Source: Macrostomum lignano (taxonomy: Eukaryota). Taken from it: DNA of 64,000 nucleotides. Numbering within the stretch: the stretch's first letter is position 1; each line of letters opens with the position of its first letter. The translations under genes were made by a program, and so were the position numbers. Positions 13,581 through 64,000 of the stretch are shown piece after piece. The stretch lies in NCBI GenBank assembly GCA_002269645.1, contig NIVC01000059.1:1116001-1180000 (forward strand), given 5' to 3'. The notes below the pieces were generated by a model. That model did no database searches. It had not been told where the DNA came from and worked only from the letters and a program-made list of their open reading frames with translations.

Positions 13581-14284
13581 CTAAAATCAGTTAGGAGCTA
13601 CTGTATATTCTGGCAATCCATCGCAGTGCTATTTGAGCGAGACTTTTTGCATTACACGAACGCACTTATTTTTGCAAGTCTTATATACCCTTTAGCTAAA
13701 TTTCTCACAAATCGCTCAGTTATCACGCGCCCTCTCTCAAATCTACATGGTGAAGTGAACTGGGGTCTTGTGTAGCTCGCATAAGCACACGCATGCATAG
13801 CCTTGCTTTCTACATCATAGCTCGAATGTACACCCTTAAATCTGTACCGTCTTGTGAGCTCCAACGAGCACAGCTGTGCAGCAAAGTAAATTGAGTTCCA
13901 GTGTTCCAGTCGTTTTGTTTGCATCCGAAATTCCTACTTACTGAGCAATAGAGAGAGAGGAGGGAGAGAGAGCGAAGCCAGAAAAGATGTCTGTTCGAAA
14001 GGAAGACAAGAGCTCAAAGATAGAAAGGACAGTCTGCAAGCCGCAGTGTCTGGCGCGTGCGTCTTGTGGCACTAGCAGAAAATGAGATTATTTAATTCGA
14101 GATGAGCCTGGAACAGGCGGAGGGGTTGCAGAGCAAGAGAGAGAAAAGCTACATAGGAAACTCTGAAGACATAATTCAATACGCTAAACTGTAAAGCTGT
14201 CTAGGAAGTCTGCATCAACGATGAGTGAGTACTGTCTAACTTGGGATCTTATGGGCCGTGCCTAAATTATTCGGGTACAAAAGA

Positions 14285-15056
<772 letters not shown>

Positions 15057-15372
15057 GTGCATGCTGTTGTCACACAAGTGACCCCAATGCCTTGGCCATT
15101 TAACTATTCGAGCGCAATCCAACTCCGCTCGGCAATTCCGTTTCCGATTGCTCTCCGGAAAATACTAAACTGTTGCCGAACGTGGAGCGCTTAGGCATTG
15201 AAAAATTGATGTTTGAAAAAAGTCTGAGCACTGAAGTAAAAACAATTTTATATACTTTATCAAGCTCCCTAGCTAGTATTTATTCTGTTTCCGCTTTGGA
15301 CAGGGTGGATTAGATGTTACTCGCAAGTGAGGAGAGATACAGCTTAGGGACTAAACTAGAGCGAGAGGCTGT

Positions 15373-30940: not shown

Positions 30941-33900
30941 TCAGCTTTGAGCTACGGACTCTTCACCGATGAAGCCCGAGTTGCTCTGGCCGCCGCCGAT
31001 GACGACGTTTTGTCCATCGCTGCGCTTTGTGACGCTTCCGTTGTCCTCTTGGTCCCCTGCTTCCGGGTCGCTTCCGGAATTATCGACATTCGAGCCTTCC
31101 TCAGTCGCCGCTACGGGACTGGCGTCGTCCCCTGGCGTTCGCTTCTCATCCAGCGACATTGACTTCATCCCGATGTCGCCGGCTTCGGCGTCGACATTGC
31201 TGCTGACGTCACCGACGCGGTTGGATTGGCGCATCCAGCTCGGTCGGATGTGGTACGCGATTACGTTGCAGATCACCAGCAGAATTATCAGTGCGATCCA
31301 CTGCGAGACCGGATGTAGGAGTTTGGCTATTAAACATACACTGTACGGTAACAATATCAGCATCATTGGCACCACTGAAAATAACAAAAACACAACAACA
31401 ACAGGAACAAAAAATATGATGGTTCTTCATATTTCTGAAGGATCCGGGCGAAGTCCATAGTCACGTCACAGGCTCGAAAAATCACATCGTCGAAAACTGA
31501 TTTAGCAGCCACCATCACACGGCTCGAAAAGGGTTTGGGTTAGGGTTAGGGTTTGAACTTGTGCCTTTTGTAGCTTGCGACGGTGGTTTTTAAACTTTTC
31601 GACGATGTAATTTTTCGAGCTTGTGACTTTTTGAGCTTGTGATGGTGCCCCATAGAGCGACCCATGGAGGTCCTTCTCTGGGTCCCTATCTAGGGTCGAT
31701 AACAACAACAGTAAATAACAACAACAACAAAAACAACAGAACCGCAGAAGCAGCAATAGAATTATTATTAACAGTAAAACAGAAAAATAAAATTTTTCTG
31801 AAAAGAAACGACTTGCACTTTAAAACTCACCGTAACAAAGCAGGTCATCAGCGTTTCCAGTCCGAAGTCGTACCAGCGCGATCCCGGGTCATTGTCCGCT
31901 GTGGCGGATATCTCGTCATAAATCCACCAGATTAGCAGGGCGATCGCTTCGATTGGAGCAACGATGCTGAAAATTTTTTTAATCGATTTTTTAGCATCCC
32001 GGATTTCTATTGAAGATGATTTGTGTTTGCTTCGTTTACCAGATTTTCAGAGCCCCTTTTCACAGAATTTTAAACAATTCTGGGTACATAATTTCGTACG
32101 TACATAGTTTCGATAATATAGTTTTTACTACTAAATCTAAATAAGTTCTTCGCACATCACATGAAAATAATGGCATGATTTGAAGCCAAAACGTCGACCT
32201 CAAAAATTCTACTAAAGCAAAGCAAAAGTCTAGTCTTTGCTGTTAAAGTTGATTCAAGGAATAGAAACTCAACTTGTCTTGGTCGACATTCAAAAAATCG
32301 ATTCAGGTAATTCTGTTAAGCGTTAAGAGGCTTCCCATGCAGTAAAGGCCACGACTGTCATTCATAAACTCACAGAATAATCACCATGGTGACGTTTGTC
32401 AGCGGCCAGTCACCGATTCCGTACTTGTTAACCATGTCCTCTTTGAACGTATTCCAGCCTACTTTGAAGACCAGCGCTTGAAACATCAGGCCGGACGGAA
32501 GCAGAGCGAAGCCCCAGATGAAATCCTGTACGGTTTTTGGAGATGTTTAAATAAGTATGATAAAATGCATACTTTCCAGGCCAATTGAGCCTGGGAGCAA
32601 GAACTTTACTTGTAATTCTTACTGGGAGAATCAAGCCTAGTGGGGGGTCTACGAATATGAAGTAACCAATTCGAGAAATGCTTATATTATATAAATTTTA
32701 ACCTGATTGTCCAACACTTGAATGCTGAGTGCGGAGGGCAGCCCAATAGAGAACATGAGCAGTCCGCACACCGGGGTCGCCAGGCGTCTGGAAACTGCGA
32801 CAACGGTTGGCAGTGCAATCATCATCATTATCACCATCATTTTTCTTTTACATTTAGATCAGCATGTCTTCTCAATCATCTCTATAACATTTAACAGCAG
32901 TTGGTTTTCACTTACGCCCAAAGTTGCACAGCGTCTGTGATGTGTGTTCAACATCCGCAATGACTGTGCTGAGTCCGGCAAAGCACAGGCACAGAAAGAA
33001 CATGATGCACAATAATTTGCCAACGACCCCCAGGCTGCCGAACAGGATGGGAATCCACACGAAGGTGAGTCCGGTGGATGCTGGCCCAGTGGTTTTAATG
33101 ATCTCAACGATACCGGTGCGGGACAAGCTCGGGTTGCTGTTAACCAGGGTGGAGAACACTGTGCCGAATATTGTGATGGCGCAGATGAGGCTGCATTATG
33201 AGTTGTTGGGGATTTTAATATTAGTAAATGCTTGCTTCTGGATAAAATTTGGTCAGTGTTTTAGCAATATTAATTTAATTCTCCATGCGATACCTTGTCG
33301 GCTTACCTGACAAGATTGTTAATAAGAGGAATCATTGTGGCAAATTTCACAACGCCATTTTTGGCGCTCATGTACGTGGCGTACGGGACAATCAGACCCA
33401 TGGCAGCGCCCGTGTCGAAAGCATTCTGCGTTAGCGCGTCCACCCACAGTTTTGCGTTTGACAACGATTCTGTAGTGGTGTTGGAAGAAATCTCTGGTAC
33501 TTTTAAAATTGCATACATAGAGGCCCAGCAAGGTTTGCAGAATGCAGCGAGTGACGCGAGTGAAATCTTTCCAACATAAACTTCTCTGCTGTCTTCTCAC
33601 GGAACACCCGCTTGAAATTTAATCAGCGAAAACGCGTACCCCAGGGGATCATGGGGGCCGCCCTCCCACGCGAATAGGCTGGCATATATTATGGCAGGGG
33701 CACGTTTGGCCCCACTGCTATCAATTTAAGCAGATCCCCAGCAACTACTTTAGTGCCCCTTGGTGCTGGCACATCTTGGTGCTAGCGCCCCTTGGTGCTA
33801 AAGCCCCTTGGTGCTAAAGCCCCTTGGTGCTGGCGCCCCTTGGTGCTAAAGCCCCTTGGTGCTAAAGCCCCTTGGTGCTAAAGCCCCTTGGTGCTAAAGC

Positions 33901-35889
33901 CCCTTGGTGCTAAAGCCCCTTGGTGCTAAAGCCCCTTGGTGCTAAAGCCCCTTGGTGCTAAAGCCCCTTGGTGCTAAAGCCCCTTGGTGCTAAAGCCCCT
34001 TGGTGCTAAAGCCCCTTGGTGCTGGCACATCTTGGTGCTAGCGCCCCTTGGTGCTAGCGCCCCTTGGTGCTAAAGCCCCTTGGTGCTAAAGCCCCTTGGT
34101 GCTAAAGCCCCTTGGTGCTAAAGCCCCTTGGTGCTAAAGCCCCTTGGTGCTAAAGCCCCTTGGTGCTAAAGCCCCTTGGTGCTAATGCTAAAGCCCCTTG
34201 GTGCTCAAGCCCCATAGTGCTAAAACCCCTTGGTGCAAAACACAACAGATAAAAAACTGTCTCTGCAATTACATGTACGTTTCTGAATTCTGAGTCAATG
34301 TTATCATTTGCATTCCAGTATTATGAACTTACCTACATCCGGGGTGAACAGAAACCGGATGCCGTAGTCGCCAAACGGCTGCAGCACCGACCAGGTGTAC
34401 GTCACCACAATGATCACTAGCAGGGTGGGCACCAGCACCAAGTTCACCTTCTCGATCCACGTGATGCCGCCAATGACGCAGGCCCCAGCCAAAAAGATTG
34501 CTAAGCCATGGAACAGCGCTGGCCAGGCTGAGTTCTGGTAGGCAACGAAATCGATTTTGATTTTGAGTACGAGTAGCATAAGTCGTATTAAGAACTGTCT
34601 GAACTCTGTGTCCACACGCCTATCTGCCTCACCGTGAGATTATCGAAAATCAATGCGCTCTCCTCTTCAGTCTGCGGTAGTTCGCTTACAATGCAGAGGC
34701 GGATCATCTCGTACAGGTAGTACAAGCACCAACCTAGGATGACAGCGTAATAGCAGCTGCAGTGTTGAAGAGTTGGGGCTATCGATCGTTAGTTACGTTT
34801 TGTTACATATTGCTACGTTACATATTGCTACAGGTAAATGAATATGAATGAATTGCCAATCTAGCCTACATCAATGGATGAAGGAACAGAATGGATTGCT
34901 AATCTAGCCAGCTTCATGGATGAAGGAATAGAATGGATTGCTAATCTAGCTAAAAACGTCAATGGATGAAGGAATAGAATGGATTGCTAATCTAGCTAAA
35001 AACGTCAATGGATGAAGGAATAGAATGGATTGCTAATCTAGCTAAAAACGTCAATGGATGAAGGAATAGAATGGATTGCTAATCTAGCTAAAAACGTCAA
35101 TGGATGAAGGAATAGAATGGATTGCTAATCTAGCTAAAAACGTCAATGGATGAAGGAATAGAATGGATTGCTAATCTAGCTAAAACGTCAATGGATGAAG
35201 GAATAGAATGGATTGCTAATCTAGCCAAAGATCATCGATGAAGGAATAGAATGGATTGCTAATCTAGCCAAAATCATGGATGAGGAAATAAAATGGATTG
35301 CTAATCTAGCCAAAATCATGGATGAAAGAATAGAATGGATTGCTAATCTAGCCAAAATCATGGATGAAAGAATAGAATGGATTGCTAATCTAGCCAAAAT
35401 CATGGATAAAAGAATAGAATGGATTGCTAATCTAGCCATCGACATCGTGGATTTAAAATCGATTCTTATTGTTGTTGTAGGCCTATGGAAGTAATTATTA
35501 ACTTAGTAAGCTAATAAATTACTGGTAATGCAATAGGTTGCCAGCTTTTCAAATGATATAATGCCCATATAAACTTGCCTGATGAAGAAGGTAACTGACG
35601 ACACCCAGCCTCCGCACCAAATGAATTTGTCGCCCATGGCCCGTTGAAAACTTTGAATTGGAGTTTTTTTATAATACCGACCGATGACGTACTCAATGAG
35701 CAGCATTGGACTGGACCAGATGAAGAGAAACAGCATCCAGGTAATCAAGAAGATCAGCGTCCCTTGGCTAGCGCTGTTCTGGGCTGCTATTCTCGGAAAT
35801 CGCCACACATTGCCTGTGCCAACCACCGTGCCCATGCACGAGAACACGATACCAAGAGTGGAGCTGAATTCCTTCTTCTCTTCGGACAT
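30941..35889 (-). CDS. SLC6/NSS sodium-dependent transporter, prokaryote-like type; 9 coding exons, 604 aa
   Basis: Exons 35889..35579, 34756..34633, 34534..34333, 33469..33307, 33190..32916, 32794..32703, 32525..32374, 31966..31831 and 31300..30941; all phases are compatible (1815 nt). Motifs GTVVGTGNVWRFP, SCYYAVILGW, LWVDALTQNAFDTG, GPASTGLTFVWIP and FAGLST. Confidence 0.93.
31465..31627. repeat. 32-bp inverted repeat pair enclosing a telomere-like (TTAGGG) tract; possible small MITE in SLC6 intron 8
   Basis: 31465..31496 pairs with 31596..31627 (2 mismatches). AGGGTTTGGGTTAGGGTTAGGGTTTG lies at 31530..31555. Confidence 0.65.
33755..34236. repeat. Second locus of the 16-bp TTGGTGCTAAAGCCCC minisatellite, in SLC6 intron 3
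   Basis: About 30 units, the same unit and orientation as at 24971..26116. Confidence 0.95.
34848..35436. repeat. 42/43-bp minisatellite (ATGGATGAAGGAATAGAATGGATTGCTAATCTAGCCAACATC), locus 1, in SLC6 coding intron 1
   Basis: About 14 units. The same family occurs in the opposite orientation at 50399..51760 and 60313..61149. Confidence 0.95.
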
Positions 35890-35945
35890 TTTGAAGGCGT
35901 CCTGCGGTTACAGGCGGCATCTTATGGTGCTGTATAGTCATAGAT

Positions 35946-36165
35946 AGTGTTCTATGGTCACTAATGGTGTTCTATGGTCACTAATGGTGTTCTATGGCCA
36001 CTAATGGTGTTCTATGGTCACTAATGGTGTTCTATGGTCACTAATGGTGTTCTATGGTCACTAATGGTGTTCTATGGTTACTAATGGTGTTCTATGGTCA
36101 CTAATGGTGTTCTATGGTCACTAATGGTGTTCTATGGTCACTAATGGTGTTCTATGGTCAGTGAT
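35946..36165. repeat. 20-bp minisatellite (GTGTTCTATGGTCACTAATG) in the putative SLC6 5'-UTR intron
   Basis: About 11 units, decaying toward 36260. Confidence 0.92.
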
Positions 36166-36294
36166 AATGTTCTACGGTCAGTGACAATGTTCTATAATTA
36201 AGTGATAGTGTTCTATGGTCATAGATAAAATTCTATGATCACAGATAGTGTTCCATGATCTTAGATGTCCCAGTAAAAAGGCCTATTAACTTAC

Positions 36295-36376
36295 CTGGCA
36301 GCAGTTCAAATATAGCTGGTGTGTCAGAAGAGTGTCTCGGTCAAGCTGCGCTCAGCTCTTCACTGTCCCTTTATAT
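36295..36376 (-). promoter_or_regulatory. Putative TATA box and non-coding first exon of the SLC6 gene
   Basis: Minus-strand TATAAAG at about 36375..36369, donor CAG|GTAAGT at 36295/36294, and acceptor at 35902, 12 nt upstream of the ATG. Confidence 0.55.
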
Positions 36377-37868
36377 GTAAATATCTTGCTGACCCGATCC
36401 AACGATAAGATCGAACAGTCAAATCTCTTTCTTTTTTTGAGCGTAGCCATTAGCTCGTACTGAATATTTTACTTCGTACGAATAATTTCGCACTCCGCTC
36501 TAAAATGCGAAAATGCTTCTGTCGGTGGCTGTGGACCAGATAAGCTCGAGAAAGCATGTTGCCTTGAATTTTTGCTTAACTTGCTATGCAAAATTATTTT
36601 GTTTATTCGCTGTTTGGATCTCCTTGACAACGAAATGATCTTTTTGTCTTCTGCGCAAGTCCGTGTCTCCAGCTCTGAATCTTGAATCAAAAAACCGAGT
36701 GAACTTTAAAAATAGATAACACAAACGCTTTTTTGCCACATGCTTTTAATGTGGAGTAATTAAAATTTTGGAGCAAATTAACGAATATATGCTATTGAAC
36801 TAAAATTACTTCGGCAGTTAACATTCTATTAGCCCTACTTGAAGTAGCAAGGTCTGTCGAATTAAAATACGGTCCTCTCAAATATATTGTGACAATAAAG
36901 AAGCAAAGTTCCACTTTTTGCTAGGTGTACAGCGCATTTATCTCTTTATTTTAGAAGCATAGGAGGCTTGCAAAGTTCCTAGTACAATGCCTAGCTGTGT
37001 ACAGTGCGCGCTATGTTTTGAGACTGTCCATGCTGTACGCTCACTTATTCAACGCTTCGACATCATTACTCAAGGCTACTACGAGGCAAATTAGGCAAAT
37101 ATAGGCAAACTTGGGCCGCAGATTTCCTGCAGAGAACGTTTTGGCCGTAATATGACTTATTGCAGTTTCTGTATAAATTGTGGTCTGGCACTCTATTATT
37201 GCTTCGTCACTATCTCTATAAACCTCTATGGTGGGACATAAGTAACTATATAACTCGGAGCTAAAACATTTTTATATACGAATCAATATAAATAACGTAT
37301 ATATGTATAACGACATACGATGCAGCTGTAATTTAGAATGCATTTCATTACTTTTGTAATGATCGAATTGAAGTTATTTTTAAAGACATTTGTGGTAAGC
37401 AGCCCATTTTCTCTCAAGTTTTTTTTCAATTTAACTGGATTTTGCGTGATGCAGCCCAGAGGGCGCGATAAAATGCATGTAGCCGCTCCCCAACTTGGAC
37501 CAGGCAAGGCGCAGAATAATTCCTGACAAGAAATTGACGGATGAGGGGTGAGACACAAAAGAAAATTGCTTCCCAGAGTGGGGATATACTGACTGACTGT
37601 ATCCTGACAGTGCCAGGGCTTGCTTTGGCTGATCAGCAATGGCCTAAGCTCCCTAATTCCTTGTTAATTTGCGGCTTCCAAAATAGACGACCGGAATCCC
37701 GCTTCCGACCTCCGCTTGAGTCTACTAAGCCTTGGCTTTCTGTGTGTTAACTTGCCGATTTCTTTCCCAGCCACCAAGGACCATGGCATGGGCTAATCCC
37801 CAAGCTGTAAACACCCGATTGGAAACTGGAAGGCTTGTTGGCGTCCAATTCCGGAACTTGGGCTCAAC

Positions 37869-37875
37869 TATAAAA
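37869..37875 (+). promoter_or_regulatory. TATA box of the prepropeptide gene
   Basis: TATAAAA, 118 nt upstream of ATG 37987. AATAAA at 38829..38834 closes the unit. Confidence 0.6.
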
Positions 37876-37986
37876 TGGAGGCAGCTTCTGCAGTCTGAGT
37901 CGATCCAGTAGGATAACTCAAACTCGCAACGGAAGGAGTCGAGAACCAGGAAGAGAAAATAGAAGAATTTTTCAGCGACACTGAGA

Positions 37987-38729
37987 ATGCGTTTCGCTTG
38001 GACTCTGCTTCTGCTTGGCCTGCTGGCGTGCTGGGCTAACTGCGGTTCTGTTGAAGCTGGCTCTCGTGAGTGCCTCCGTTAGTCGCGTTGCAGTCACTTT
38101 TTTTAGTTCATTTTTTAAAGACTCCTCCAATCATTGAATGTATAATTTTCCTGCAATTTCAGATCCTGATTGGGACGAAATGGCTGAAGGGTAAAAGCTG
38201 TTTTGAGAATGGATTTGTTAATAAATAGGCGTACTCGACCAATGGAACCTGTGAAATTAAAGGATAATATATTCTATTCTGAGGTGTCTTTGTGGGCGCA
38301 TGCAATCTGTAGATAACATCCGTTGTGCTAGTTTACATAAATTCTTTCTTTCTCGATGCATCGTTGTGTCAGCCCTAATAATAACACATGCAATAATAAT
38401 GCTCGCAGTAGGATTGTGCTCATTCCGGAGCACATGGCCGATTCATGTAAACCTTAGGAATAACGCACTGCCTGTGACGTATTGTACCTACGAAATGTCC
38501 AAGCCTCACAGCCATAATTGGCACAATTTCCTCCGAAAAAAACCGTTCCAGCCCGGAAGACGAGCCAGACGATGACGGCTGTCGCTGGGTGTGCCGGCCG
38601 CGCCACCTGAGCAAGCGCCCTTTCGGCGCGTTGTTCCGGCCCAGGCACCCGCCTCGCCCGGATTCGGATCGCAAGAAGCGTCCGTTTGGGCCGCTGTTTA
38701 GGCCTCACGGTCGCAGGCCGCGCGACTGA
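37987..38729 (+). CDS. Small secreted prepropeptide (neuropeptide-precursor architecture); 3 exons, 94 aa
   Basis: Exons 37987..38065 (donor GTGAGT, phase 1), 38163..38190 (28 nt, phase 2) and 38552..38729. Translation: MRFAWTLLLLGLLACWANCGSVEAGSHPDWDEMAEGPEDEPDDDGCRWVCRPRHLSKRPFGALFRPRHPPRPDSDRKKRPFGPLFRPHGRRPRD*. It has a signal peptide, an acidic spacer, KR/KKR sites, a repeated peptide and a G-RR site. Confidence 0.8.
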
Positions 38730-39007
38730 TTCCAACTAGTTTGACGCATTGCTACGGAAGATCCGTGTTGGCCTCGCATCACATAGACTTGAATGATTTT
38801 CAAGCATAAAAGCACTGACTGAAAACTAAATAAACTTATTGTGTGGGCGTTACGGCCACTCAGGCATAGAAGCTTTATGCTGACTAACTTGTCGCATGTA
38901 TTGTGCTTTTTGCATCGACCGTCTGCGTTGGTTGGTACGCTAAAATTCAAAATCAATAGTGGCAATCTTTGAGTATAATCTTCTAAGTCGTATTGAAGCA
39001 ATAAAAG

Positions 39008-39297
39008 TCAATAACGATTGGCTGAAAGACCCTCCGCTTCGGGATATTTGGCAGCGTACTGCGGCGTCAAGGCAGCGTGACCGTGTCGGATTAAACTGTG
39101 AGCGGTGTCCACGACGCTCTGGGTCAGGTCCATCGGCTCCACTCGAAGCAGCTCGCGCATCTGAAGCAAAAAAGTCAGAGTAGCTACATGTATATAAGCG
39201 TGAAGGCCTACTAAGTTTATAGATGACTACTTTTTTGAGACAAACTGGCCTTTATCAACACTAAAAAAATCCTACATCTACATCTACATTTATCCAG

Positions 39298-39349
<52 letters not shown>

Positions 39350-42300
39350 TTATCTATCTATTTATGTATGTATATGTATTTATTTATTGATTTTTTATTT
39401 ATGTATTTATGTATCTATTCATCCATCTATCAGTGCCGCTTTCCGCTTTCATATCTGAGGTGTCCCTTGCTCAAAAAACAGACTTAACAGGCAACCACTT
39501 GAACAGATTGAGGGGGATTGCCCGTTTAATCTTGTCTTAACTTGTACCTTAGAATTGTCGTAGACAGTCTCGCAGCCCAGACCGAACAGTAGTTGGGTGA
39601 CGTCCGACCGGAAGTAGCCAATCAGCCGGAAAAGCATATCCGGCGCCGATCTGAGCGGCACTCGGTAGCCCAACGGGCCGAGGTGCTCATGCAGGATCAG
39701 GGCGATATCCTTCAGCGACAGGGTGCCCGTGTTGACAATCACCCTCTGGCCGTCCGTGCCGGAAGTCTTCAGAGCGCTCAGGTGGGCCTTGGCTACATCA
39801 CGGACGTCGACGCACGGAAGGAACACCTGAGGCAGCAGCGGCGCCTCGCGGTTCAAAAGGAACCTGATCAGGGTGAGCGATGTGCTGTAGGTGCTCTGGG
39901 CGAGCAGCGGCCCAATGACCACGCCTGGGTTGATGCACACCAGACTGAAGTGCGGGTCTGCGGGGCGATTCTCTTGATAAATACTTAATCCGTTAATCTC
40001 TGTATAGAAATAGAAAACTGCACTTAGAGTTGCCTATTCACTTTCGGATGCTTGCTCAACGCTGCTGACTTTCAGCGAGGAATCGAGGAGTTGAAAATTG
40101 GGTTTAAAGTACTTTGAGCACAGCATACGCATATTACAGAGCCTCACTGTCGATGACGTGTGTTTTTCCTTGAATATCGAATCAGATATCATCATCGTCA
40201 TGTACAGTCGTAGACGTCGGAAATTCACCTTTACAAGCTTAAATTGAGGGCGTCTACCTAGCAACCTACCAATACAAAAAACCTTTTAGTCTAACAGCCT
40301 AACCGTACTTCTAGCGAAAGTGTTTGATTAGGGTCAATCAATGTCTGTTCAGTCGATAGAACTTATAAATTGTAAATTCTGGCTCGTATATCGCATCATT
40401 TTTGTGAACAAATGATTTCTTTTTGAAATTGTCATTTCCTAACATTTTAGAGTCACGTATATGCTGATAGTTGTTGTAGTTTAGAATTTAAAATCATATA
40501 AACAAATTAGGGGCGTGGTGTTCTAGTGGCAGAGATATGCGGGCAGGACACAATGACTAATGCAATTTTGTTTTAACAAGTTTGCGCAAATAATGCAAGT
40601 GATGCCTACTTGCACAGGGGAACAGGATGTTATAATATAAACAACGCGAGCAAAGTGTTCAGGCAGCATGTGCTATCGTACATGCACAGGCAGTCATACA
40701 GAGAACATTAGAAGTTATCGCAGCTTTTACTCTTAATATCCTTGAACAATCGCCAGGCCTCTTTCTCGGCCAGGGTTTTGCTGGTTTCGTAAGTCAGTCC
40801 GAGCGGCCTGTTGTTGGTGTCGAACCAGACCGTCTCGTCATAGATCCGGCCTCTGGTACCCATGATGCCTGCGGTGTGGCGTTTTATGTAGTTCGGAAAA
40901 ATGCTTTAATGAATTCCAACAGCATATAGATACTTGTTCGATAGAATTATGCTATAGTTCCACTGTTGCCGAGTCTAACGTCCCTGTTTCCGAGTCTAAC
41001 GTCACTGCAACAGAGTCTAACGTCACTGCAACAGAGTCTAACGTAACTGCAACAGAGTCTAACGTCCCTGTTGCCGACTCTAACGTCACTGCAACAGAGT
41101 CTAACGTCCCTGTTGGCGAGTCTAACGTCACTGCAACAGAGTCTAACGTCACTGCAACAGAGTCTAACGTAACTGCAACAGAGTCTAACGTCCCTGTTGC
41201 CGACTCTAACGTCACTGCAACAGAGTCTAACGTCCCTGTTGCCGACTCTAACGTCACTGCAACAGAGTCTAACGTCCCTGTTGCCGACTCTAACGTCACT
41301 GCAACAGAGTGTAACGTCCCTGTTGGCGAGTCTAACGTCACTGCAACAGAGTCTAACGTCCCTGTTTCCGGTCTAACGTCACTGCAACAGAGTCTAACGT
41401 CCCTGTTTCCGGTCTAACGTCACTGCAACAGAGTCTAACGTCCCTGTTTCCGGTCTAACGTCACTGCAACAGAGTCTAACGTCCCTGTTGCCGAGTCTAA
41501 CGTCCCTACTCTAGTTCTTATCTACGCCCGTAGTTGATACCTTCTCGTAAAAAGTTAGAGGTCAAAAAACAAACCCGCAATGCTGGCTACCGAGGATGTT
41601 ACAACCAACTTCTTGACAGATTTTGTCGCGGCCACGGCTTCAATGATGGCTCTGGTGCCGCCGATGGCTGTCCGCAGGGTTACATCGGCCTCGGCTTGAG
41701 TTTTCGGCACCCTCTCTGGCAAACTGCTGGCCACGTGGACAACGTACTGACAGCCGCTGACTAACTGCGTCCAGCTGACTGTCTGGTCCAGCAGGTCAGC
41801 TTCGACAAACTCGATTCTATCGCTCAGATACTCGGACAAAGCAGCTTTGAGCTGGCTCACCTAGTATTGATTACAGTCAAAATAGTAGATGATAAGCGTC
41901 TACGGTATTTGACCTTAAATGTCACATCGATGCTGGCTGGTAGATTCTTCTTTCCCAGATCATTCCCAACTTAATGGCCATGGATAACCAAAGTGTAGGG
42001 ACACTGTACAACTGCAACACTGTACATTCTCGCTATAGTGTGTCTTATAGAACCGGTCTCTAGCGACAATGTACGGCGGTTCTCCTGTGTTTTTTCCGAA
42101 ACATATTTTCAGAAAGGCTCTGAGTATCTTACGAGCTACACCATCCAAAATAAACATTTCTTATCTTACCTCAAATGCTATTTCTAAACATTAAAGGGGT
42201 TTAGGCTCTAATTTCATTTCCAGATTAATCTATAAATAGCTATATAAACTTATGCGCGAACGTCGCTGAGCGAAATTTCCATAATCCAATACTCTGATCT

Positions 42301-44335
42301 ATATTTCACAAGAAAAATTACCTTGACGTTTTGATTGGAAGTCAAATTTCGCGCGGTCACTCGCAAGCTGTATCCATCGCCCAGCAACAGCTTGGCGACG
42401 TGGCTGCCAATAAAGCCGGTTGCTCCAGTCAGTAAAACTAAGCCTGGGAGGATGCAGTCAGCTGACTAAATTATTGCGATGCTGAGCTTGTAACAAATTT
42501 ATGCGTCCAGTTTTGCTGATGCTACCACCGACACTTATGCCGGTACATCTAACGACACATCTACCGACACATCTACCGACACATCTACCGACACATCTAA
42601 CGACACATCTAACGACACATCTACCGACACATCTACCAACACATCTAACGACACATCTAGCGACACATCTACCGACACATCTACCGACACATCTACCGAC
42701 ACATCTAACGACACATCTACCGACACATCTACCGACACATCTACCGACACATCTACCGACACATCTAACGACACATCTACCGACACATCTACCGACACAT
42801 CTACCAACACATCTAACGACACATCTACCGACACATCTATTAACACATCTACCGACACATCAACCGACACATCTACCGACACATCTAGCGACACATCTAC
42901 CGACACATCTAGCGACACATCTACCGACACATCTACCGACACATCTACCGACACATCTACCGACACATCTACCGACACATCTACCGACACATCTAACGAC
43001 ACATCTACCGACACATCTAACGACACATCTACCGACACATCTACCAACACATCTAACGACACATCTACCGACACATCTACCGACACATCTAACGACACAT
43101 CTACCGACACATCAACCGACACATCTACCGACACATCTACCGACACATCTAACGACACATCTACCGACACATCTACCGACACATCTACCAACACATCTAA
43201 CGACACATCTACCGACACATCTATTAACACATCTAACGACACATCTACCGACACATCTACCGACACATCTACCGACACATCTAACGACACATCTACCGAC
43301 ACATCTACCGACACATCTACCGACACATCTACCGACACATCTAACGACACATCTACCGACACATCTACCGACACATCTACCAACACATCTAACGACACAT
43401 CTACCGACACATCTATTAACACATCTACCGACACATCTACCGAAACATCTAACGACACATCTACCGACACATCTACCGACACATCTACCGACACATCTAC
43501 CGACACATCTAACGACACATCTACCGACACATCTAACGACACATCTACCGACACATCTACCAACACATCTAACGACACATCTACCGACACATCTACCGAC
43601 ACATCTAACGACACATCTACCGACACATCTACCGACACATCTACCGACACATCTACCGACACATCTAACGACACATCTACCGACACATCTACCGACACAT
43701 CTACCAACACATCTAACGACACATCTACCGACACATCTATTAACACATCTAACGACACATCTACCGACACATCTACCGACACATCAACCGACACATCTAC
43801 CGACACATCAACCGACACATCTACGGACACATCAACCGACACATCTACCGACACATCAACCGACACATCTACCGACACATCAACCGACACATCAACCGAC
43901 ACATCTACCGACACATCAACCGACACATCTACCGACACATCTACCGACACATCAACCGACACATCTAGCGACACATCTAGCGACACATCAACCGACACAT
44001 CTAGCGACACATCTAGCGACACATCGACCGATGCATCTATTAACCCTTTCATTGACAATGAAAGCCTTTCAAAGCCTTGAAACCCTTTCAGAGACACCTC
44101 GACAGACACTTCTAGCGACACTTTACATATTTTCTACCGACTCCATTCCTTTTCATTGACAAATATAAAACTCAACAGTTAGTTTTGATAATCAGTTGAA
44201 CAAAAATTGTAATGCAGCAAAAAATTTACGCATAAATTTTATTATTATACTATAATATTAAATCTGAAGAATGCTGTATAATTTTAGATTAGAGAAATTG
44301 AACAAAGCAACGAACTTACCCTGACTTTCAGACAT
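39008..44335 (-). CDS. Extended-SDR NAD(P)-dependent reductase/epimerase, DFR/CCR/GRE2-like; 6 exons, 374 aa
   Basis: Exons 44335..44320, 42443..42322, 41860..41575, 40868..40731, 39957..39548 and 39160..39008; all phases are compatible (1125 nt). Motifs [35 protein letters not shown] and [10 protein letters not shown]. Confidence 0.92.
39296..39360. repeat. Short (TATC)n microsatellite in the last reductase intron
   Basis: About 14 copies. Confidence 0.9.
40965..41506. repeat. 21-bp minisatellite with two alternating unit types (GAGTCTAACGTCACTGCAACA / GAGTCTAACGTCCCTGTTGCC)
   Basis: About 25 units in reductase intron 3, largely A-B alternation with A-A-A runs. Confidence 0.93.
42524..44036. 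repeat. 12-bp minisatellite (ACATCTACCGAC), about 1.5 kb, in reductase intron 1
   Basis: About 125 units. The 552-aa and 528-aa ORFs are the repeat read on each strand. Confidence 0.97.
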
Positions 44336-45906: not shown

Positions 45907-48043
45907 CTGATTGGGCGGGACTGGCTGGATAGCCTTCCGCTAGACTGGAGCAGCGTCAACCAAGTCTAGACCAAGGGCGAGCATCCTAGAGTCTGCCAAC
46001 TGCTGAAGGAGTTCGCCAATGTCTTCGAGCCGGGTCTCGGCAAGTTCTCCCGGCCGCCAGTGCGCCTGAACCTGAAAGCTGACGCCTGCCCTCGCTTCCT
46101 GAAGGCTCGCAGCGTGCCGTTCGCCCTGAAGGCCAAAGTCGAGGAGCAGCTCGACGAAGAGATCGAGCAGGGCGTGTTAGAGCCGGTCGCCAGCTCTGAC
46201 TACGCGTCGCCTATCGTGCCAGTGCTCAAGTCGGATGGCTCCGTCCGAATCTGCGCGGACTTCAAGAGGACGGTCAATCTGGACGTGGAGCCGGACCGCT
46301 ATCCGCTGCCGCGGATCGAGGAGATCTTCGCCAAGTTGGCCGGAGGACAGCGGTTCACGAAGCTTGACCTATCGCAAGCCTACTCGCAGTGGCCACTAGA
46401 CGAGTCGTCCCAGAAGCTCTGCACTATCAACACCACAAAGGGGCTGCTGCGCTAACGCACGGCTGCCATTCGGTATGACTCCTGCAGTCAGAATTTTACA
46501 AAGGCAGATAGGCAGATGTTCGTCGAGTCTGGTCAGTGGCCAAAGCCTTCGCCACCGGAGCTTCGCCCGTTCGGTTCGCGGTCAGCCGAGCTCAGTGTGC
46601 AGGACGGCTGCATCCTGTGGGGCAGTCGCGTCGTGGTTCCTAAGAGCGGACGATCACCCTTGCTGCAGTGTCTGCACCAAGGTCACCAAGGCGCCACTCG
46701 GATGAAGGCGCTCGCCCGCAGCGTCTTTTGGTGGCCCAATCTGGACGCTGACATCGAGCAGGTGGCGAGCCGGTGTCAAGACTTCCAGGAGCTGCAAAAG
46801 TCGCGGGCGCCCTACCCACTACAGCCGTGGGCTTGGCCGGACGTGGTCACGGATCCACGTCGACTACGCTGGACCAGTCGACGGACGCATGCTGCTGGTG
46901 CTGGTGGATACGCACTCCAAGTGGCTGGATGTCCACATCATGACAGGTTCGATTACCGCGGCTACCGTCCAGAAGCTGCGCCAGAGCTTCGCAACTCACG
47001 GGCTGCCAGAAATTCTTGTGTTGGACAACGGGCCCAATCTAGTGAGCGAGGAGATGGAGCGGTTTCTCCGGAGCAATGGCATCCAGCACGTTCGCACGGC
47101 ACCGTACCACCCGGCATCGAACGGCCAGGCCGAGCGCACCGTCCAGACGCTAAAGAGGTCGCTCGCCAGGCGGAGAGGAGGCTCGCTGGAGGAGCGCGTG
47201 TCCCGGTTCCTCCTGACCTACCGGACGACGCCGCATTCAACGACTGGTGTCGCACCCTGTGAGCTGCTGATGGGGCGGAGGCTGCGCTCGCTGCTCGACC
47301 GGGTCCGGCCAGACCTGCCGTTGAAGGTCGGGTGCCAACAGGCAATGAGAAGGAGCGACATGACGAACGCGCCCACCACCGGCCGATCGCGGCCGGAGAC
47401 TCCGTGCTGGCAAGGGACTTTTCCGACGAGGGCCGATGGAAGCCGGCAACCGTGACCAGTAGCCTCAGTGCAGCAAACTTCACCTGCGAGTTCAATGATA
47501 GCCGAACAGCTCACCGTCATGCCGACCAAGATCGGAAGCCTGCGGCTACTGCCTCGTCCGATTCAGAGTTTCCTAACCGCGTGCCGCAGCAGTCGGCTAG
47601 CGAGCCTGACAGTTCAGCTGACCCAACGGCCGATGCCAGTGGAGTCGACAGTGCTGAAACAGCGACGAGCCCCGAACTACCGAGACGTTCGGCCAGAGTG
47701 CGGATGGCTCCTGATCGACTGACTTACCACTGCGATGACCTAGTCGTGTGTACTGACTTGCTCTATTCTGTTCCTACACAGTGACTTGATGGGGAGGAAT
47801 GTGATGACTTAGCTCGGCCGTGCTGTTCCTTGCCATCTATACCAAATGAGTTTGGTTCGTTGCACGCAATGTGTAACTTCTATGTACTCGTGCTTTCTCT
47901 CTATCAATTGCTCAGCCTGCACGTTGTACCTTGTTCGCCTAAGCATACGCAACGTGCATTCCTTTCGGTCTCTACTATAAATACATGGTATTGGGAGACA
48001 CTAGCTCTCTATCTTGGTTCTAACTAAAACATAGTCTACAACA
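45907..48043 (+). mobile_element. Degenerate Ty3/gypsy LTR retrotransposon (K02A2.6/Mag-like), 5'-truncated and internally deleted, with 3' LTR
   Basis: Protease tail LIGRDWL at 45907; RT N-half (ASPIVPVLKSDGSVRICADFK, KLDLSQAY, RLPFG) at 46060..46512; integrase Zn finger and DDE core (LVDTHSKW, LDNGP, SNGQAER) at 46516..47330; PPT GGGGAGGAA at 47791..47799; LTR TGT...ACA at 47800..48043. It carries stops and frameshifts. Confidence 0.93.
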
Positions 48044-50207: not shown

Positions 50208-53200
50208 ATGCCGGATGATCAGCCAGTTTTCACAATCGATAACTCCCTTGCGGAGGAGACTATGAGAAGTTTTGTGAGACGGCACTGGACTACAGTGTAC
50301 TTTTGCATTGGTCTGCTGGTGCACATTGGATGCCTGGTTGTACTGCATAGGACCGAGACTAACTCTGAGGTATGGCTGTGTTGCTTTGTGTCTGAGCCTG
50401 TTGGCTAGATTAGCTATCCATTCTGTTCCTTCATCCATGATGTTGGCTAGATCAGCAATCCATTCTGTTCCTTCATCCATGATGTTGGCTAGATCAGCAA
50501 TCCATTCTAGCTGTTCCTTCATGCATGATGTTGGCTAGATTAGCTATCCATTCTGTTCCTTCATCCATGATGTTGGCTAGATCAGCAATCCATTCTATTC
50601 CTTCATCCATGATGATGTTGTTGGCTAGATTAGCAATCCATTCTGTTCCTTCAACCATGATGTTGGCTAGATTAGCAATCCATTCTATTCCTTCATCCAT
50701 GATGTTGGCTAGATTAGCAATCCATTCTATTCCTTCAACCATGATGTTGGCTAGATTAGCAATCCATTCTATTCCTTCATCCATGATGTTGGCTAGATTA
50801 GCAATCCATTCTATTCCTTCATCCATGATGATGTTGTTGGCTAGATTAGCTATCCATTCTGTTCCTTCAACCATGATGTTGGCTAGATTAGCTATCCATT
50901 CTGTTCCTTCATCCATGATGTTGGCTAGATTAGCAATCCATTCTGTTCCTTCATCCATGATGTTGGCTAGATCAGCAATCCATTCTAGCTGTTCCTTCAT
51001 GCATGATGTTGGCTAGATTAGCAATCCATTCTAGCTGTTTCTTCATCCATTATGTTGGCTAGATTAGCAATCCATTCTGTTCCTTCATCCATAATGTTGG
51101 CTAGATCAGCAATCCATTCTAGCTGTTCCTTCATCCATGATGTTGGCTAGATTAGCAATCCATTTTATGCCTTCATCCATGATGATGTTGATGGCTAGAT
51201 TAGCAATCCATTCTGTTCCTTCATCCATGATGTTCGCTAGATTAGCAATCCATTCTATTCCTTCATCTATGATATTGATGGCTAGATTAGCAATCCATTC
51301 TATTCCTTCATCTATGATATTGATGGCTAGATTAGCAATCCATTCTGTTCCTTCATCCATGATGTTCGCTAGATTAGCAATCCATTCTATTCCTTCATCT
51401 ATGATATTGATGGCTAGATTAGCAATCCATTCTATTACTTCATCAATGATGTTGGCTAGATTAGCAATCCATTCCATTCCTTCATCTATGATGCTAGCTA
51501 GATTAGCAATTCATTCTATTACTTCATCAATGATGTTGGCTAGATTAGCAATCCATTCTGTTCCTTCATCCATGATGTGGTCTAGATTAGCAATCCATTC
51601 TGTTCCTTCATCCATGATGTGGTCTAGATTAGCAATCCATTCTGTTCCTTCATTCATGATGTGGTCTAGATTAGCAATCCATTCTGTTCATTCATTCATG
51701 ATGTTGGCTAGATTAGCAATCCATTCTATTCCTTCATCCATGATGTTTGGCTATAGATTATCAATTCATTTTATTTGCTCATATGATGTAACCACGCTCT
51801 GGTCGCGGGATAGGGCATGGGAACTTTTTCGAAAGTGCCTCCTATCCCGTGTACCCTCTGCACAGAGCTGTCGAGACTCGGCCAGGTCTCCGCCCAGGCC
51901 TGGAGACTCCCGCTCTGCTGCCCCCCCTCCTGCTGCCTTGGTTCCGTCTCCCCTGCCGCCACACCTGCCTTTCCGGAGCTCCCTGTCCCTCTCTGTACCC
52001 TCCCCTCTACCTTATCTCCCCTGCACTCCACCCTATTCTTCTTGTACTTTCCCTTTCCCCCCTCTTTTTGTCTCTCTCTGCACTCTTTTCCTGCGCTGTC
52101 CCCTCCTTCTCTGTGTCTACTTACAGTATTTTGTGTGCTCACCGTCTCCCCATCCCCTCCCAAACTCCCAAACGGTGACGCAAGTCGTGGGACCCCTTCT
52201 TCCCCCCGATGACTCATCGATGACTCATCTCCCTCTCTTGCGCAACCTTTTCTCATGCCATTGTTCTCCTCCCCAAATTTCTCATGCGACACCCACCCCA
52301 CCTCCGCTTCTATTGTTCTCGTTTTTGATTCTTTTGTTCTCTCGACCCCCACCAATTATCGCATTTTCTCCGATTTTCTCTTTCTTTTGTTCTCGTTTTC
52401 GCACCTAATTATCACCTTTTCTCCAATGTTTACTTTTCCATTGTTCTCAGTTTTCCCCAATTATCCCCGATTTCCAATTCCTTTGTTCTCGACCCCAGCC
52501 CTATTGTTCTCAATGTTTGCGTGCGCAACACTTTCGCGACCACCCGCTGCGCCAATTATCCCCCCACCCCACCTCCGGATTGCGCAATTTCCCTATTTCT
52601 CATGTTGCTATGCCGGTCTCATGCTTCTCATCATGACTCATTCTGACGTCATTCTGCCGGCAGCCAATCAGAGAGAGGGAGCCATGGTAACGACCTTGAG
52701 GAGGCGGCTGTGAGGTCTATAAAAGGAAGCGATTTCGGCATGAGAATCCTCAACTTTTCGCCTCTTTGGGCTTGCCGTCAGACTGAGTTCTGACCCATTC
52801 GTCTATAAGACGAATCCCTGCCGGTCCGCGGTCTGTCACCGCCAAGTTATCCTTAGCTCCCCAAGTGAGCTCGCCTATCGGCCAGCGGTCTGATACCGCC
52901 CAGCATCATCAGCATCGCCTGATCTACATCAGCGCCTCGTCGCTCCAGCGCATCGCCGCTTCACTGTCTGCCTGACTGCAGCCTACAGCCACCCTCGGTC
53001 ACTCCGCCTCTCTCTCTCTCTCTCTGTGCAGCTGCCGGTAAGTTCCTGTTACTAATTTGTGCTCTAATTGCCTTTGCTTATCCGGGGTTTGCCTATTTTC
53101 CATTGTCTGATTAGAGAGCTGAGCCAATTGTGATACCGTATCTTTTGCTGTATTTTACTCAATAGTGAAGCCGCCTAATTGCCCGATTATTCGCCTAAGG

Positions 53201-62300: not shown

Positions 62301-63075
62301 GCAAGTCGCGACAAAACGCTATAAGTAAGTTATAATAGGGCACTTAAAATATTTGTTATTACGAGCTATAGGCCCTTGAAATTGTTATAATTAGGCACTT
62401 AAAATACCCGTAGTTTATAATTACGTGCACCTAAGTTACGAATAATTATTTAGTGTTCCAGTTTTCTACTCATTCTAGAAACTGTCCGAAAAGACTAATG
62501 CAGATTATTTTCCAAATGATTGCTTAACGATATTAATTCATTAATTCTCAAACGAAAATGAAGGATTCTGTTGGGGGACTTTAACAAGAGTTTCTCGTCT
62601 AGCTCTTATCTTAACTACTTTCTGAGTAGTTAGGCGCCTTTGAAACGTGCTCAAGCATTCGATTTCGTACTAATCCAAGGAGCCGAGCTTGGAGCAAACT
62701 AACTAACTGACTGACCGACCGCAGGCAGTAATCCCATTATAGCTAGCAGGCAAAATCTAGTCAAGAGTTCAGCTGGTCTACATTATATACTGCAGCTATA
62801 CATTGGCTATTGAAATTGATTTCTGCCGAGGGCCAACCGCGGCCTACTGGATTGCAGAGGAGGTCAATCAAGCTGGACACTCTCAAGCCGGACGAATTCA
62901 AGTGATTTGAGGGCGGCGGCGTGGAAGGCAGAGAGAATGTTTAAGAATTCCTCCGTAAAAGCAACTTGAGAAGCTGAGAGAGGCGCGCGGACATGGCTTT
63001 GAGGACTGATTTGAGAAGAGTTTGATGAAGCATTCGTGGAGCTGCGCAAATTATGCAGGACATCCTATTGCTTCT

Positions 63076-64000
<925 letters not shown>

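What the first reader, a model, noticed from the sequence alone, without database searches (positions are those of the whole stretch)
37869..38834. Hidden three-exon prepropeptide encoding a repeated (R)PFGxLFRP(R)H peptide: candidate new neuropeptide family
The ORF track misses it because its exons are 79, 28 and 178 nt. It forms a complete unit: TATA box, signal peptide, acidic spacer, a C-x3-C loop (GCRWVC), then KR-PFGALFRPRH... and KKR-PFGPLFRPH-G-RR, a stop and AATAAA. G-RR predicts C-terminal amidation. Convertases disfavour cleavage before Pro, so the mature forms may keep the Arg (RPFGPLFRPH-amide), as substance P does; this loosely resembles bradykinin (RPPGFSPFR). I do not recognise the motif from known neuropeptide families. 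An alternative reading is a Pro/Arg-rich cationic defence or secretory peptide.
Basis: partly seen in the sequence, partly recalled or inferred. Interest (0 to 1): 0.88.

Follow-up and report, generated by a model that had tools for sequence, protein, structure and literature searches.

The report
Orphan flatworm secreted repeat-peptide precursor gene
This is a real, already annotated but unnamed three-exon gene of the flatworm Macrostomum lignano that encodes a small secreted precursor with two selectively conserved copies of an RPFGxLFRP peptide; it is most likely a lineage-restricted neuropeptide or hormone, but a defence-peptide role is not excluded.

Summary
Exons 37987-38065, 38163-38190 and 38552-38729 (+) splice through canonical GT/AG sites into a 94-aa ORF. 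That ORF has a hydrophobic leader, an acidic spacer, a C-x3-C pair and two KRPFGxLFRP units.

It is not hidden. The protein is identical to GenBank PAA92260.1 (BOX15_Mlig024080g3, "hypothetical protein") of Macrostomum lignano. That annotation was built from RNA-seq transcripts, so both junctions have indirect RNA support. Two further syntenic copies exist, as expected for this polyploid genome.

The two peptide units share 9 of 10 residues, yet 8 of those 9 use different codons (P about 1e-4). This points to selection on the peptide sequence itself.

No relative was found in 1.84 billion representative proteins, Pfam, PDB or metagenomes. The motif is absent from the searchable literature and from the planarian prohormone catalogue.

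The neuropeptide reading is plausible but unproven. No expression or peptide data were reachable. All three basic sites, including the G-RR site needed for amidation, are followed by Pro. The C-terminal half is 46% Pro+Arg with net charge +13, which also fits a Pro/Arg-rich defence peptide.

The closest motifs are RPamides and neuromedin U/pyrokinin. Both fail their defining C-terminal rule. Interest is moderate.

The parts
37869..37875 (+). TATAAAA, a candidate TATA box 118 nt upstream of the ATG
   Evidence: Sequence. Identical in paralogues g1 and g2. Function is inferred; no TSS data.
36300..37986 (.). Unusually conserved upstream intergenic block, the presumed promoter/5'UTR, shared head-to-head with an SNF transporter gene on the minus strand
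   Evidence: About 1.3% substitutions between g3 and g1, against 7-9% in the introns and 4-6% locus-wide. No Rfam family in 35500-39500.
37987..38065 (+). Exon 1 CDS (79 nt): Met, hydrophobic leader MRFAWTLLLLGLLACWANCGSVEA, and the start of the propeptide. Donor GTGAGT, phase 1.
   Evidence: 9-residue hydropathy up to 2.97; -3/-1 candidate cleavage sites after residues 17 and 24. Only 2 synonymous differences among the paralogues.
38163..38190 (+). Exon 2 (28-nt microexon) encoding (H)PDWDEMAE(G). It is required to keep the reading frame.
   Evidence: 100% identical in the three paralogues, while the flanking introns are about 90-91% identical.
38552..38729 (+). Exon 3 CDS (178 nt): acidic spacer end, C-x3-C (CRWVC), KR-PFGALFRPRHPPRPDSD, RKKR-PFGPLFRPH-G-RR-PRD, and the TGA stop
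   Evidence: All three non-synonymous paralogue differences lie outside the two PFGxLFRP cores.
38614..38643 (+). Repeat copy 1: K-R-P-F-G-A-L-F-R-P (AAG CGC CCT TTC GGC GCG TTG TTC CGG CCC)
   Evidence: It carries 2 synonymous and 0 non-synonymous differences in g1/g2.
38677..38706 (+). Repeat copy 2: K-R-P-F-G-P-L-F-R-P (AAG CGT CCG TTT GGG CCG CTG TTT AGG CCT), followed by H-G-R-R-P
   Evidence: 9 of 10 residues equal copy 1, and 8 of those 9 use a different codon.
38829..38834 (+). AATAAA polyadenylation signal, about 100 nt after the stop codon
   Evidence: Conserved in g1 and g2.

Best explanation
Mlig024080 is an expressed, lineage-restricted gene of Macrostomum lignano. It encodes a 94-aa prepropeptide.

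Proposed mechanism (inferred): the leader directs the protein into the secretory pathway, and the acidic spacer neutralises the basic C-terminal half. The propeptide is then cut at the three basic clusters (KR57, RKKR76, RR90) to release two related short peptides built on (R)PFGxLFRP. These act as extracellular signalling ligands, either a neuropeptide or a peptide hormone, most probably through a GPCR.

Every basic cluster is followed by Pro. Cleavage is therefore likely to fall within or before the basic pair rather than after it. That would give Arg-Pro N-termini: RPFGALFRPRHPPRPDSD, RPFGPLFRPH(-NH2 if the Gly is exposed) and RPRD.

What is shown: the gene structure, transcript-based annotation, three retained copies, and amino-acid-level selection on the repeat. 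What is inferred: secretion, cleavage positions, amidation, cell type and receptor.
For: - Exact identity to PAA92260.1, with matching gene span.
- The NIVC annotation derives only from StringTie/TACO/de novo transcripts plus TransDecoder (PMC5730564). Both junctions, including the 28-nt microexon, are therefore transcript-supported.
- The three syntenic copies keep the splice sites, ORF, TATA box and AATAAA. Exons are 97-100% identical against introns at 90-91%.
- Among the paralogues there are 4 synonymous and 3 non-synonymous changes. None of the non-synonymous changes falls in the PFGxLFRP cores.
- In the intragenic repeat, 9 of 10 residues are identical and 8 of 9 differing codons are synonymous. 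Binomial P = 1.8e-4; simulation P = 6.5e-5.
- The precursor architecture fits: hydrophobic leader with -3/-1 sites, spacer charge -10 against +13, basic flanks and Gly-Arg-Arg.
- M. lignano has a nervous-system-expressed PC2 homologue (PMC4490696).
- Cleavage between or before dibasic residues is a documented proneuropeptide route through cathepsin L/V (PMC9070308).
Against: - There is no evidence of neuronal or endocrine expression, no peptidomics and no receptor.
- No homologue was found outside M. lignano.
- All three basic sites have Pro at P1'. From my knowledge of convertase specificity (for example the uncleaved Arg-Arg-Pro inside neurotensin), this disfavours canonical C-side cleavage. 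That includes the cleavage needed to expose Gly for amidation.
- Copy 1 has no amidation signal.
- A C-terminal His-amide is unusual among known neuropeptides (own knowledge).
- The composition (46% Pro+Arg, 7 RP dipeptides, net +13) fits defence peptides equally well.
- No SignalP or NeuroPred was available.
Confidence: 0.5

Rival explanations
1. It is a host-defence peptide: a Pro/Arg-rich cationic antimicrobial peptide precursor. An anionic propiece masks a strongly cationic C-terminal region. That region is released whole (about 50 aa) or as fragments from epidermal, gut or gland cells, and acts on microbes.
For: The C-terminal 50 aa are 20% Pro and 26% Arg, with 7 RP dipeptides and net charge +13, facing a spacer of -10. 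Dibasic-Pro sites may resist convertases, which would leave a longer cationic product (specificity from own knowledge). RKKR is a furin-type site usable in any secretory cell (own knowledge). The gene has no homologues, as is typical of fast-evolving immune effectors.
Against: The conserved part is a specific mixed hydrophobic motif (PFGxLFRP) kept under strict purifying selection while synonymous sites are saturated. The basic, Pro-rich linker is where the paralogues vary (R71H, R47H). The predicted fragments are short (9-17 aa), and fragment 1 carries DSD, giving only a modest net charge. No similarity to any known Pro/Arg-rich antimicrobial peptide was found.
Confidence: 0.2
2. It is a secreted signalling or manipulative peptide from a non-neural gland, for example a prostate or seminal-fluid peptide transferred at mating, or a pharyngeal or adhesive-gland product. 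It would use the same prohormone-like processing.
For: It is small, secreted, taxon-restricted and hormone-like in architecture. M. lignano is known to express many unannotated secreted prostate transcripts (PMC5977470; only the title and abstract were used). In planarians, prohormone genes are also expressed in the copulatory apparatus, glands and gut (PMC2953531).
Against: There is no positive evidence. The gene ID was not found in the reproduction-related supplements I could search, but those files were truncated or use other identifiers, so this says nothing either way. Seminal-fluid genes usually evolve fast at the protein level, whereas here the motif is strongly constrained.
Confidence: 0.15
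3. It is a divergent member of an already known neuropeptide family, either PRXamide/neuromedin U-pyrokinin or RPamide, rather than a new family.
For: Copy 1 GALFRPRH matches NMU-8 YFLFRPRN at 5 of 8 residues and cockroach pyrokinin LVPFRPRL at 4 of 8 (PMC1397894). RPFGPLFRP matches Antho-RPamide-1 LPPGPLPRPamide at 6 of 9. Antho-RPamide-4 GP(Hyp)SLFRPamide and Nematostella pQLLFRPamide end in the same LFRP (PMC7523074). The nematode peptides NLP-2/22/23 end in FRPG, processed to FRPamide (PMC7303124).
Against: The defining C-termini are not met. RP is followed by H-G-RR or by R-H-P-P, never by Gly, and there is no P-R-X-Gly. No Pfam (including the NMU family) or PDB hit appears even at E = 10. 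A shared 4-5-residue word is expected by chance across the known peptide universe (my estimate). Planarians already have a canonical PRXamide gene, ppl-1, encoding YFSPRMamide, with a quite different sequence. The authors consider the cnidarian RPamides confined to Hexacorallia.
Confidence: 0.1

Closest known systems
Multi-copy amidated neuropeptide prohormones of flatworms (Schmidtea mediterranea npp/spp/ppl genes, Collins et al. 2010, PMC2953531)
   Same: A small precursor with a leader peptide, spacer and repeated short peptides flanked by basic residues, with Gly as amide donor. Many members are flatworm-restricted orphans. M. lignano has a neural PC2 homologue.
   Different: None of the planarian prohormone sequences in the held supplement contains LFRP, FRPH, PFGP, PFGA or FRPR. 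There is no sequence relative anywhere. Here every basic site is followed by Pro.
RPamide peptides: sea-anemone Antho-RPamides (LPPGPLPRPamide, GP(Hyp)SLFRPamide, Nematostella pQLLFRPamide) and nematode FRPamides NLP-2/-22/-23
   Same: A Pro-rich short peptide with a G-P-L-x-R-P / L-F-R-P core. It shares 6 of 9 residues with Antho-RPamide-1 and an identical LFRP with Antho-RPamide-4.
   Different: The family is defined by a C-terminal Arg-Pro-NH2, which needs RPG in the precursor. Here RP is followed by His-Gly or Arg-His-Pro. No homology at precursor level is detectable.
Neuromedin U / pyrokinin (PRXamide) family
   Same: LFRPR in copy 1 equals the NMU-8 core FLFRPRN, and FRPR is shared with cockroach pyrokinin LVPFRPRL.
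   Different: No Gly follows LFRPRH, so there is no amide. Copy 2 reads FRPH, not FxPRX. No Pfam NMU hit. Planarian ppl-1 (YFSPRMamide) is the canonical flatworm representative.
Substance P / bradykinin-type Arg-Pro N-termini
   Same: A basic residue followed by Pro at the start of each unit. This predicts retention of Arg and an aminopeptidase-resistant Arg-Pro N-terminus (own knowledge).
   Different: Only 3 of 9 residues are shared with bradykinin. Bradykinin is excised from kininogen by kallikrein, not from a small prohormone. There is no tachykinin FxGLMamide motif.
Pro/Arg-rich antimicrobial peptides (apidaecin, PR-39, Bac7; recalled from memory)
   Same: High Pro+Arg content (46%), repeated RP/PRP units, strong positive charge, and an anionic pro-region.
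   Different: No sequence similarity was found. The constrained part is a hydrophobic-aromatic motif. The predicted fragments are short. Activity is untested.

Membership tests
Secreted peptide-hormone / neuropeptide precursor (generic kind) | N-terminal signal peptide | tested here: met
   There is an n-region (MR) and a 12-14-residue hydrophobic core (hydropathy up to 2.97). Candidate -3/-1 cleavage sites lie after residues 17 (CWA|N) and 24 (VEA|G). This is a heuristic only; SignalP was not available.
Secreted peptide-hormone / neuropeptide precursor (generic kind) | Repeated or conserved short peptide(s) flanked by mono- or dibasic cleavage sites | tested here: met
   Two KRPFGxLFRP units are flanked by KR, RKKR and RR. 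Selection on the amino-acid sequence is supported at P about 1e-4. Caveat: P1' is Pro at all three sites.
Secreted peptide-hormone / neuropeptide precursor (generic kind) | C-terminal Gly followed by basic residues (amidation signal) | tested here: inconclusive
   Copy 2 has H-G-R-R, but Pro follows the pair. Copy 1 has no Gly.
Secreted peptide-hormone / neuropeptide precursor (generic kind) | Expression in neurons or endocrine cells, and mature peptides detectable | not testable with these tools
   No expression or peptidomic data for Mlig024080 were reachable.
RPamide neuropeptides (cnidarian Antho-RPamides; nematode NLP-2/22/23) | C-terminal Arg-Pro-NH2, meaning ...R-P-G followed by a cleavage site in the precursor | tested here: not met
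   RP is followed by H-G-RR (copy 2) or R-H-P-P (copy 1). Family definition taken.
PRXamide (neuromedin U / pyrokinin / sCAP) | C-terminal F-X-P-R-X-NH2 | tested here: not met
   Copy 1 has F-R-P-R-H but then P-P with no Gly. Copy 2 ends F-R-P-H-G. No Pfam hit at E <= 10. Motif taken.
PRXamide (neuromedin U / pyrokinin / sCAP) | Activates NMU/pyrokinin-type GPCRs | not testable with these tools
   This needs a receptor assay.
Bradykinin / kinins | RPPGFSPFR-type sequence released from a kininogen | tested here: not met
   Identity is 3 of 9. The precursor is a 94-aa protein without any Pfam domain.
Pro/Arg-rich antimicrobial peptides | Cationic and Pro- and Arg-rich (roughly 25% or more Pro, with PRP/RP repeats) | tested here: inconclusive
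   The C-terminal 50 aa are 20% Pro and 26% Arg, with 7 RP dipeptides and net +13. The composition is compatible, but Pro is below the usual level and there is no homology.
Pro/Arg-rich antimicrobial peptides | Antimicrobial activity, or immune-inducible or epithelial expression | not testable with these tools
   This needs an experiment.

The most novel reading that the evidence does not exclude
(R)PFGxLFRP(R)H peptides are a previously undescribed, Macrostomum- or macrostomorph-specific neuropeptide family. They would be processed non-canonically within the basic pair to give Arg-Pro N-termini and a rare C-terminal His-amide, and would act through a dedicated GPCR. Alternatively, they could be the first bilaterian link to the cnidarian and nematode LFRP/FRP-amide peptides.
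Probability: 0.3. Interest if true: 0.55.

Novelty: new member of a known kind. Interest (0 to 1): 0.38.

Why it matters
If confirmed, it would add one lineage-specific peptide ligand to the signalling repertoire of M. lignano, the only flatworm with routine transgenesis. There its promoter, cells, receptor and RNAi phenotype can all be tested directly.

The systematic dibasic-Pro arrangement would make it a clean natural test case for how invertebrate prohormones are cut when Pro occupies P1'.

It does not open a long-standing question. Flatworm genomes hold dozens of orphan prohormone-like genes, and this one is already in GenBank as a hypothetical protein.

It is also a useful calibration point: short spliced peptide genes are invisible to ORF-based scans.

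Tried and rejected
**Searches for relatives**
- The word-indexed search of 5.8 billion proteins found only the M. lignano cluster.
- Full phmmer against 1.84 billion representatives found only self plus P0004. P0004 is a 615-aa translated tandem repeat lacking the motif, with its E-value inflated by six repeats. I rejected it as spurious.
- Pfam at E <= 10 gave nothing.
- PDB phmmer at E <= 10 gave only a chance CD8 match.
- The metagenome scan matched 600 patterns, and none was confirmed by tblastn.
- Rfam on 35500-39500 gave nothing.

**Literature**
- Searches for the gene ID and six motif substrings, run twice, found no relevant paper.
- A search for named M. lignano npp/npf/flp genes found none.
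- No M. lignano single-cell atlas was found.
- McVeigh et al. 2009 (PMC2749192) and Koziol et al. 2016 are the two flatworm neuropeptide catalogues most likely to list such a gene. Neither is held.

**Supplementary tables**
- I searched five supplements for Mlig024080 and found no hits: Wudarski 2017, Grudniewska 2018, Brand 2020 and Weber 2018.
- These misses are uninformative, because the files are truncated or use other identifiers.

**Logan assemblies**
- No Logan or RNA-seq contig carries the exact protein, so I obtained no direct spliced-read evidence.

**Readings considered and rejected**
- A chance ORF: excluded by identity to the annotation and by conservation in the paralogues.
- A fragment of a larger gene: excluded by the in-frame upstream stop and the leader peptide.
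- A bradykinin relationship: only 3 of 9 residues match.

**Searches not run**
- I ran no further search on looking for an M. lignano ppl-1 orthologue. The PRXamide membership test was already failed by direct inspection.

Full report
**1. What is there**

Segments 37987-38065, 38163-38190 and 38552-38729 on the + strand total 285 nt. They translate without a stop to a 94-aa protein, MRFAWTLLLLGLLACWANCGSVEAGSHPDWDEMAEGPEDEPDDDGCRWVCRPRHLSKRPFGALFRPRHPPRPDSDRKKRPFGPLFRPHGRRPRD.

- Both introns have canonical boundaries: GTGAGT...TTTCAG and GTAAAA...TTCCAG.
- The ATG is preceded by an in-frame stop.
- TATAAAA lies at 37869-37875 and AATAAA at 38829-38834.
- Without splicing, the region gives only 31-aa and 46-aa ORF fragments. 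That is why an ORF list does not show the gene.
- Skipping the 28-nt exon would break the frame.

**2. Whose gene it is**

A search of 5.8 billion proteins returned one cluster: three 94-aa "hypothetical proteins" of the flatworm Macrostomum lignano.

- The window's protein is identical to PAA92260.1 (BOX15_Mlig024080g3).
- That gene sits on the 1.49-Mb scaffold NIVC01000059.1 of assembly GCA_002269645.1.
- The annotated gene span of 743 nt is exactly 37987-38729.

The gene is therefore not unannotated. According to the genome paper, the GenBank annotation of this assembly was produced from a genome-guided transcriptome (StringTie plus TACO plus a de novo assembly, with ORFs called by TransDecoder) and not from ab initio prediction (PMC5730564). 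The existence of this model therefore implies transcript support for both junctions, including the microexon. I could not see the reads themselves. No RNA-derived contig in the assembly index carries the protein.

**3. Paralogues**

Two more copies, g1 and g2, lie in the same gene neighbourhood: an SNF-family transporter upstream on the opposite strand and an NAD-dependent epimerase/3-beta-HSD-like gene downstream. This fits the known redundancy of this polyploid genome.

- In a three-way alignment all splice sites, the TATA box and the AATAAA are conserved.
- Exons are 97-100% identical, while the introns are 90-91% identical and carry a 93-bp indel.
- The CDS shows four synonymous and three non-synonymous differences.
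- The non-synonymous ones (D44A, R47H, R71H) all lie in the spacer, loop or linker.
- Two of the synonymous ones lie inside peptide copy 1.
- The counts are small, but the pattern is that of a coding gene under constraint.

**4. The repeat is under selection as a peptide**

The two units K-R-P-F-G-(A/P)-L-F-R-P share 9 of 10 residues, but 8 of the 9 shared residues are encoded by different codons.

- Given that 27% of random single-base changes in these codons are synonymous, 8 or more synonymous out of 9 differing codons has P = 1.8e-4.
- Simulating nine random changes keeps 9 or more of 10 residues in 6.5e-5 of trials.
- The duplication is therefore old enough to have saturated silent sites, while the amino-acid sequence was held.

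This is the strongest single argument that (R)PFGxLFRP is the functional product. It is typical of ligands with a specific partner.

**5. Architecture**

- The N-terminus has a short basic n-region and a 12-14-residue hydrophobic core. Possible signal-peptidase sites lie after residue 17 or 24. This is a heuristic; SignalP was not available.
- The next 20 residues carry net charge -10, and the remaining 50 carry +13.
- Basic clusters sit at KR57, RKKR76 and RR90. Copy 2 is followed by Gly-Arg-Arg.
- M. lignano has a PC2 homologue expressed in the nervous system (PMC4490696).

All of this fits a prohormone. Two points temper it.

- All three basic clusters are followed by Pro. To my knowledge, convertases disfavour Pro at P1'; the Arg-Arg-Pro inside neurotensin stays uncut.
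- Cleavage between or before paired basic residues is a documented alternative route through cathepsin L/V (PMC9070308). It would give three products that all begin with Arg-Pro. This is attractive but inferred.
- Copy 1 has no Gly, so at most one of the two peptides is amidated.

**6. Relatives and literature**

No relative was detected by any search:

- full HMMER against 1.84 billion representative proteins, where the only other hit was a translated tandem repeat that I reject;
- Pfam at E <= 10;
- PDB sequences;
- a confirmed-by-tblastn scan of metagenome contigs.

These collections appear to contain no other Macrostomum proteomes. Conservation in relatives is therefore untested, not negative.

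Neither the gene ID nor any of twelve motif substrings occurs in the 8.3 million searchable full texts in a relevant paper. The supplement with the Schmidtea prohormone sequences contains none of LFRP, FRPH, PFGP, PFGA or FRPR. The two catalogues most likely to list M. lignano peptides (McVeigh 2009, Koziol 2016) are not held. That remains a gap.

**7. Closest known motifs**

Bradykinin shares only 3 of 9 residues. Better look-alikes, checked in papers rather than from memory, are these:

- Sea-anemone Antho-RPamide-1, LPPGPLPRPamide (6 of 9 residues).
- Antho-RPamide-4, GP(Hyp)SLFRPamide, and Nematostella pQLLFRPamide, which share the same LFRP (PMC7523074).
- Nematode NLP-2/22/23, ending in FRPG, processed to FRPamide (PMC7303124).
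- NMU-8 YFLFRPRN (5 of 8 residues with copy 1) and cockroach pyrokinin LVPFRPRL (PMC1397894).

Neither family definition is met. RPamides need R-P-Gly and PRXamides need P-R-X-Gly. Here RP is followed by H-G-RR or R-H-P-P. A shared 4-5-residue word is within chance expectation across all known peptides. I treat these as functional analogies, not membership.

**8. Rivals**

The C-terminal 50 residues are 20% Pro and 26% Arg, with seven RP dipeptides, opposite an anionic propiece. This is also the layout of Pro/Arg-rich defence peptides, and if the dibasic-Pro sites resist cleavage a long cationic product would result. Against this, the constrained part is the hydrophobic-aromatic core, while the basic linker is where the paralogues vary.

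A gland or seminal-fluid peptide is also possible. Planarian prohormone genes are expressed in many non-neural secretory tissues.

I could obtain no expression data. The supplements searched were truncated or use other identifiers.

**9. Verdict**

- It is a genuine, expressed, taxon-restricted secreted-peptide precursor whose repeated motif is under strong amino-acid-level selection.
- Confidence by reading: signalling peptide (neuropeptide or hormone) about 0.5, defence peptide about 0.2, gland or seminal peptide about 0.15, and divergent member of a known family about 0.1.
- It is a new member of a known kind and not categorically new. It is already in GenBank as a hypothetical protein.

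Noticed in passing
window 36300-37986: The 1.7 kb upstream of the peptide gene is far more conserved between the homeologous copies than anything else nearby. Substitutions are about 1.3% here, against 7-9% in the gene's introns and 4-6% across the 20-kb locus. The block lies between the divergently oriented SNF transporter gene and the peptide gene. It is a candidate shared regulatory region, or a gene-conversion tract. No Rfam family matches it.
   Followed up: partly
window 30941-35889 (-): An annotated 604-aa sodium:neurotransmitter symporter (Pfam SNF) gene lies head-to-head with the peptide gene, in all three paralogous loci. I did not determine the transporter subfamily. The adjacency of a neuronal-type transporter is suggestive but may be coincidence.
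   Followed up: no
window 37969-37976: A pyrimidine tract plus AG (ttttcag|CGAC) sits 10 nt upstream of the ATG. It could be a spliced-leader trans-splice acceptor, since about 39% of M. lignano genes are trans-spliced according to PMC5730564. Not tested.
   Followed up: no
window 46516-47455 (+), GC 0.60 block 46001-48000: ORFs here match the retroviral-type integrase zinc-binding domain (Integrase_H2C2, E = 1.9e-12) and the integrase core (rve, E = 1.7e-12). The matches are split over two frames. This is probably a decayed LTR-retrotransposon pol fragment.
   Followed up: partly
window 3053-3661 (+): A long exon encodes the N-terminal half of a G-protein beta subunit (Pfam WD40_Gbeta, E = 4e-47).
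   Followed up: partly
window 14241-15194; 42501-44159; 51137-52408; 63036-63896: Long tandem or minisatellite arrays give spurious long ORFs on both strands (LSIY, THLP/VDVS, ARLAIHS and CLSV repeats). The 42.5-44.2 kb array has an extreme GC skew (-0.52) and lies inside the span of the downstream epimerase-like gene.
   Followed up: no
L001 10440-10585 / L002 equivalent, versus window 38437-38481: Intron 2 of paralogues g1 and g2 carries about 93 bp more than the window copy, and the segment around it is replaced rather than merely extended. This indel accounts for the 833-nt versus 743-nt gene spans.
   Followed up: partly
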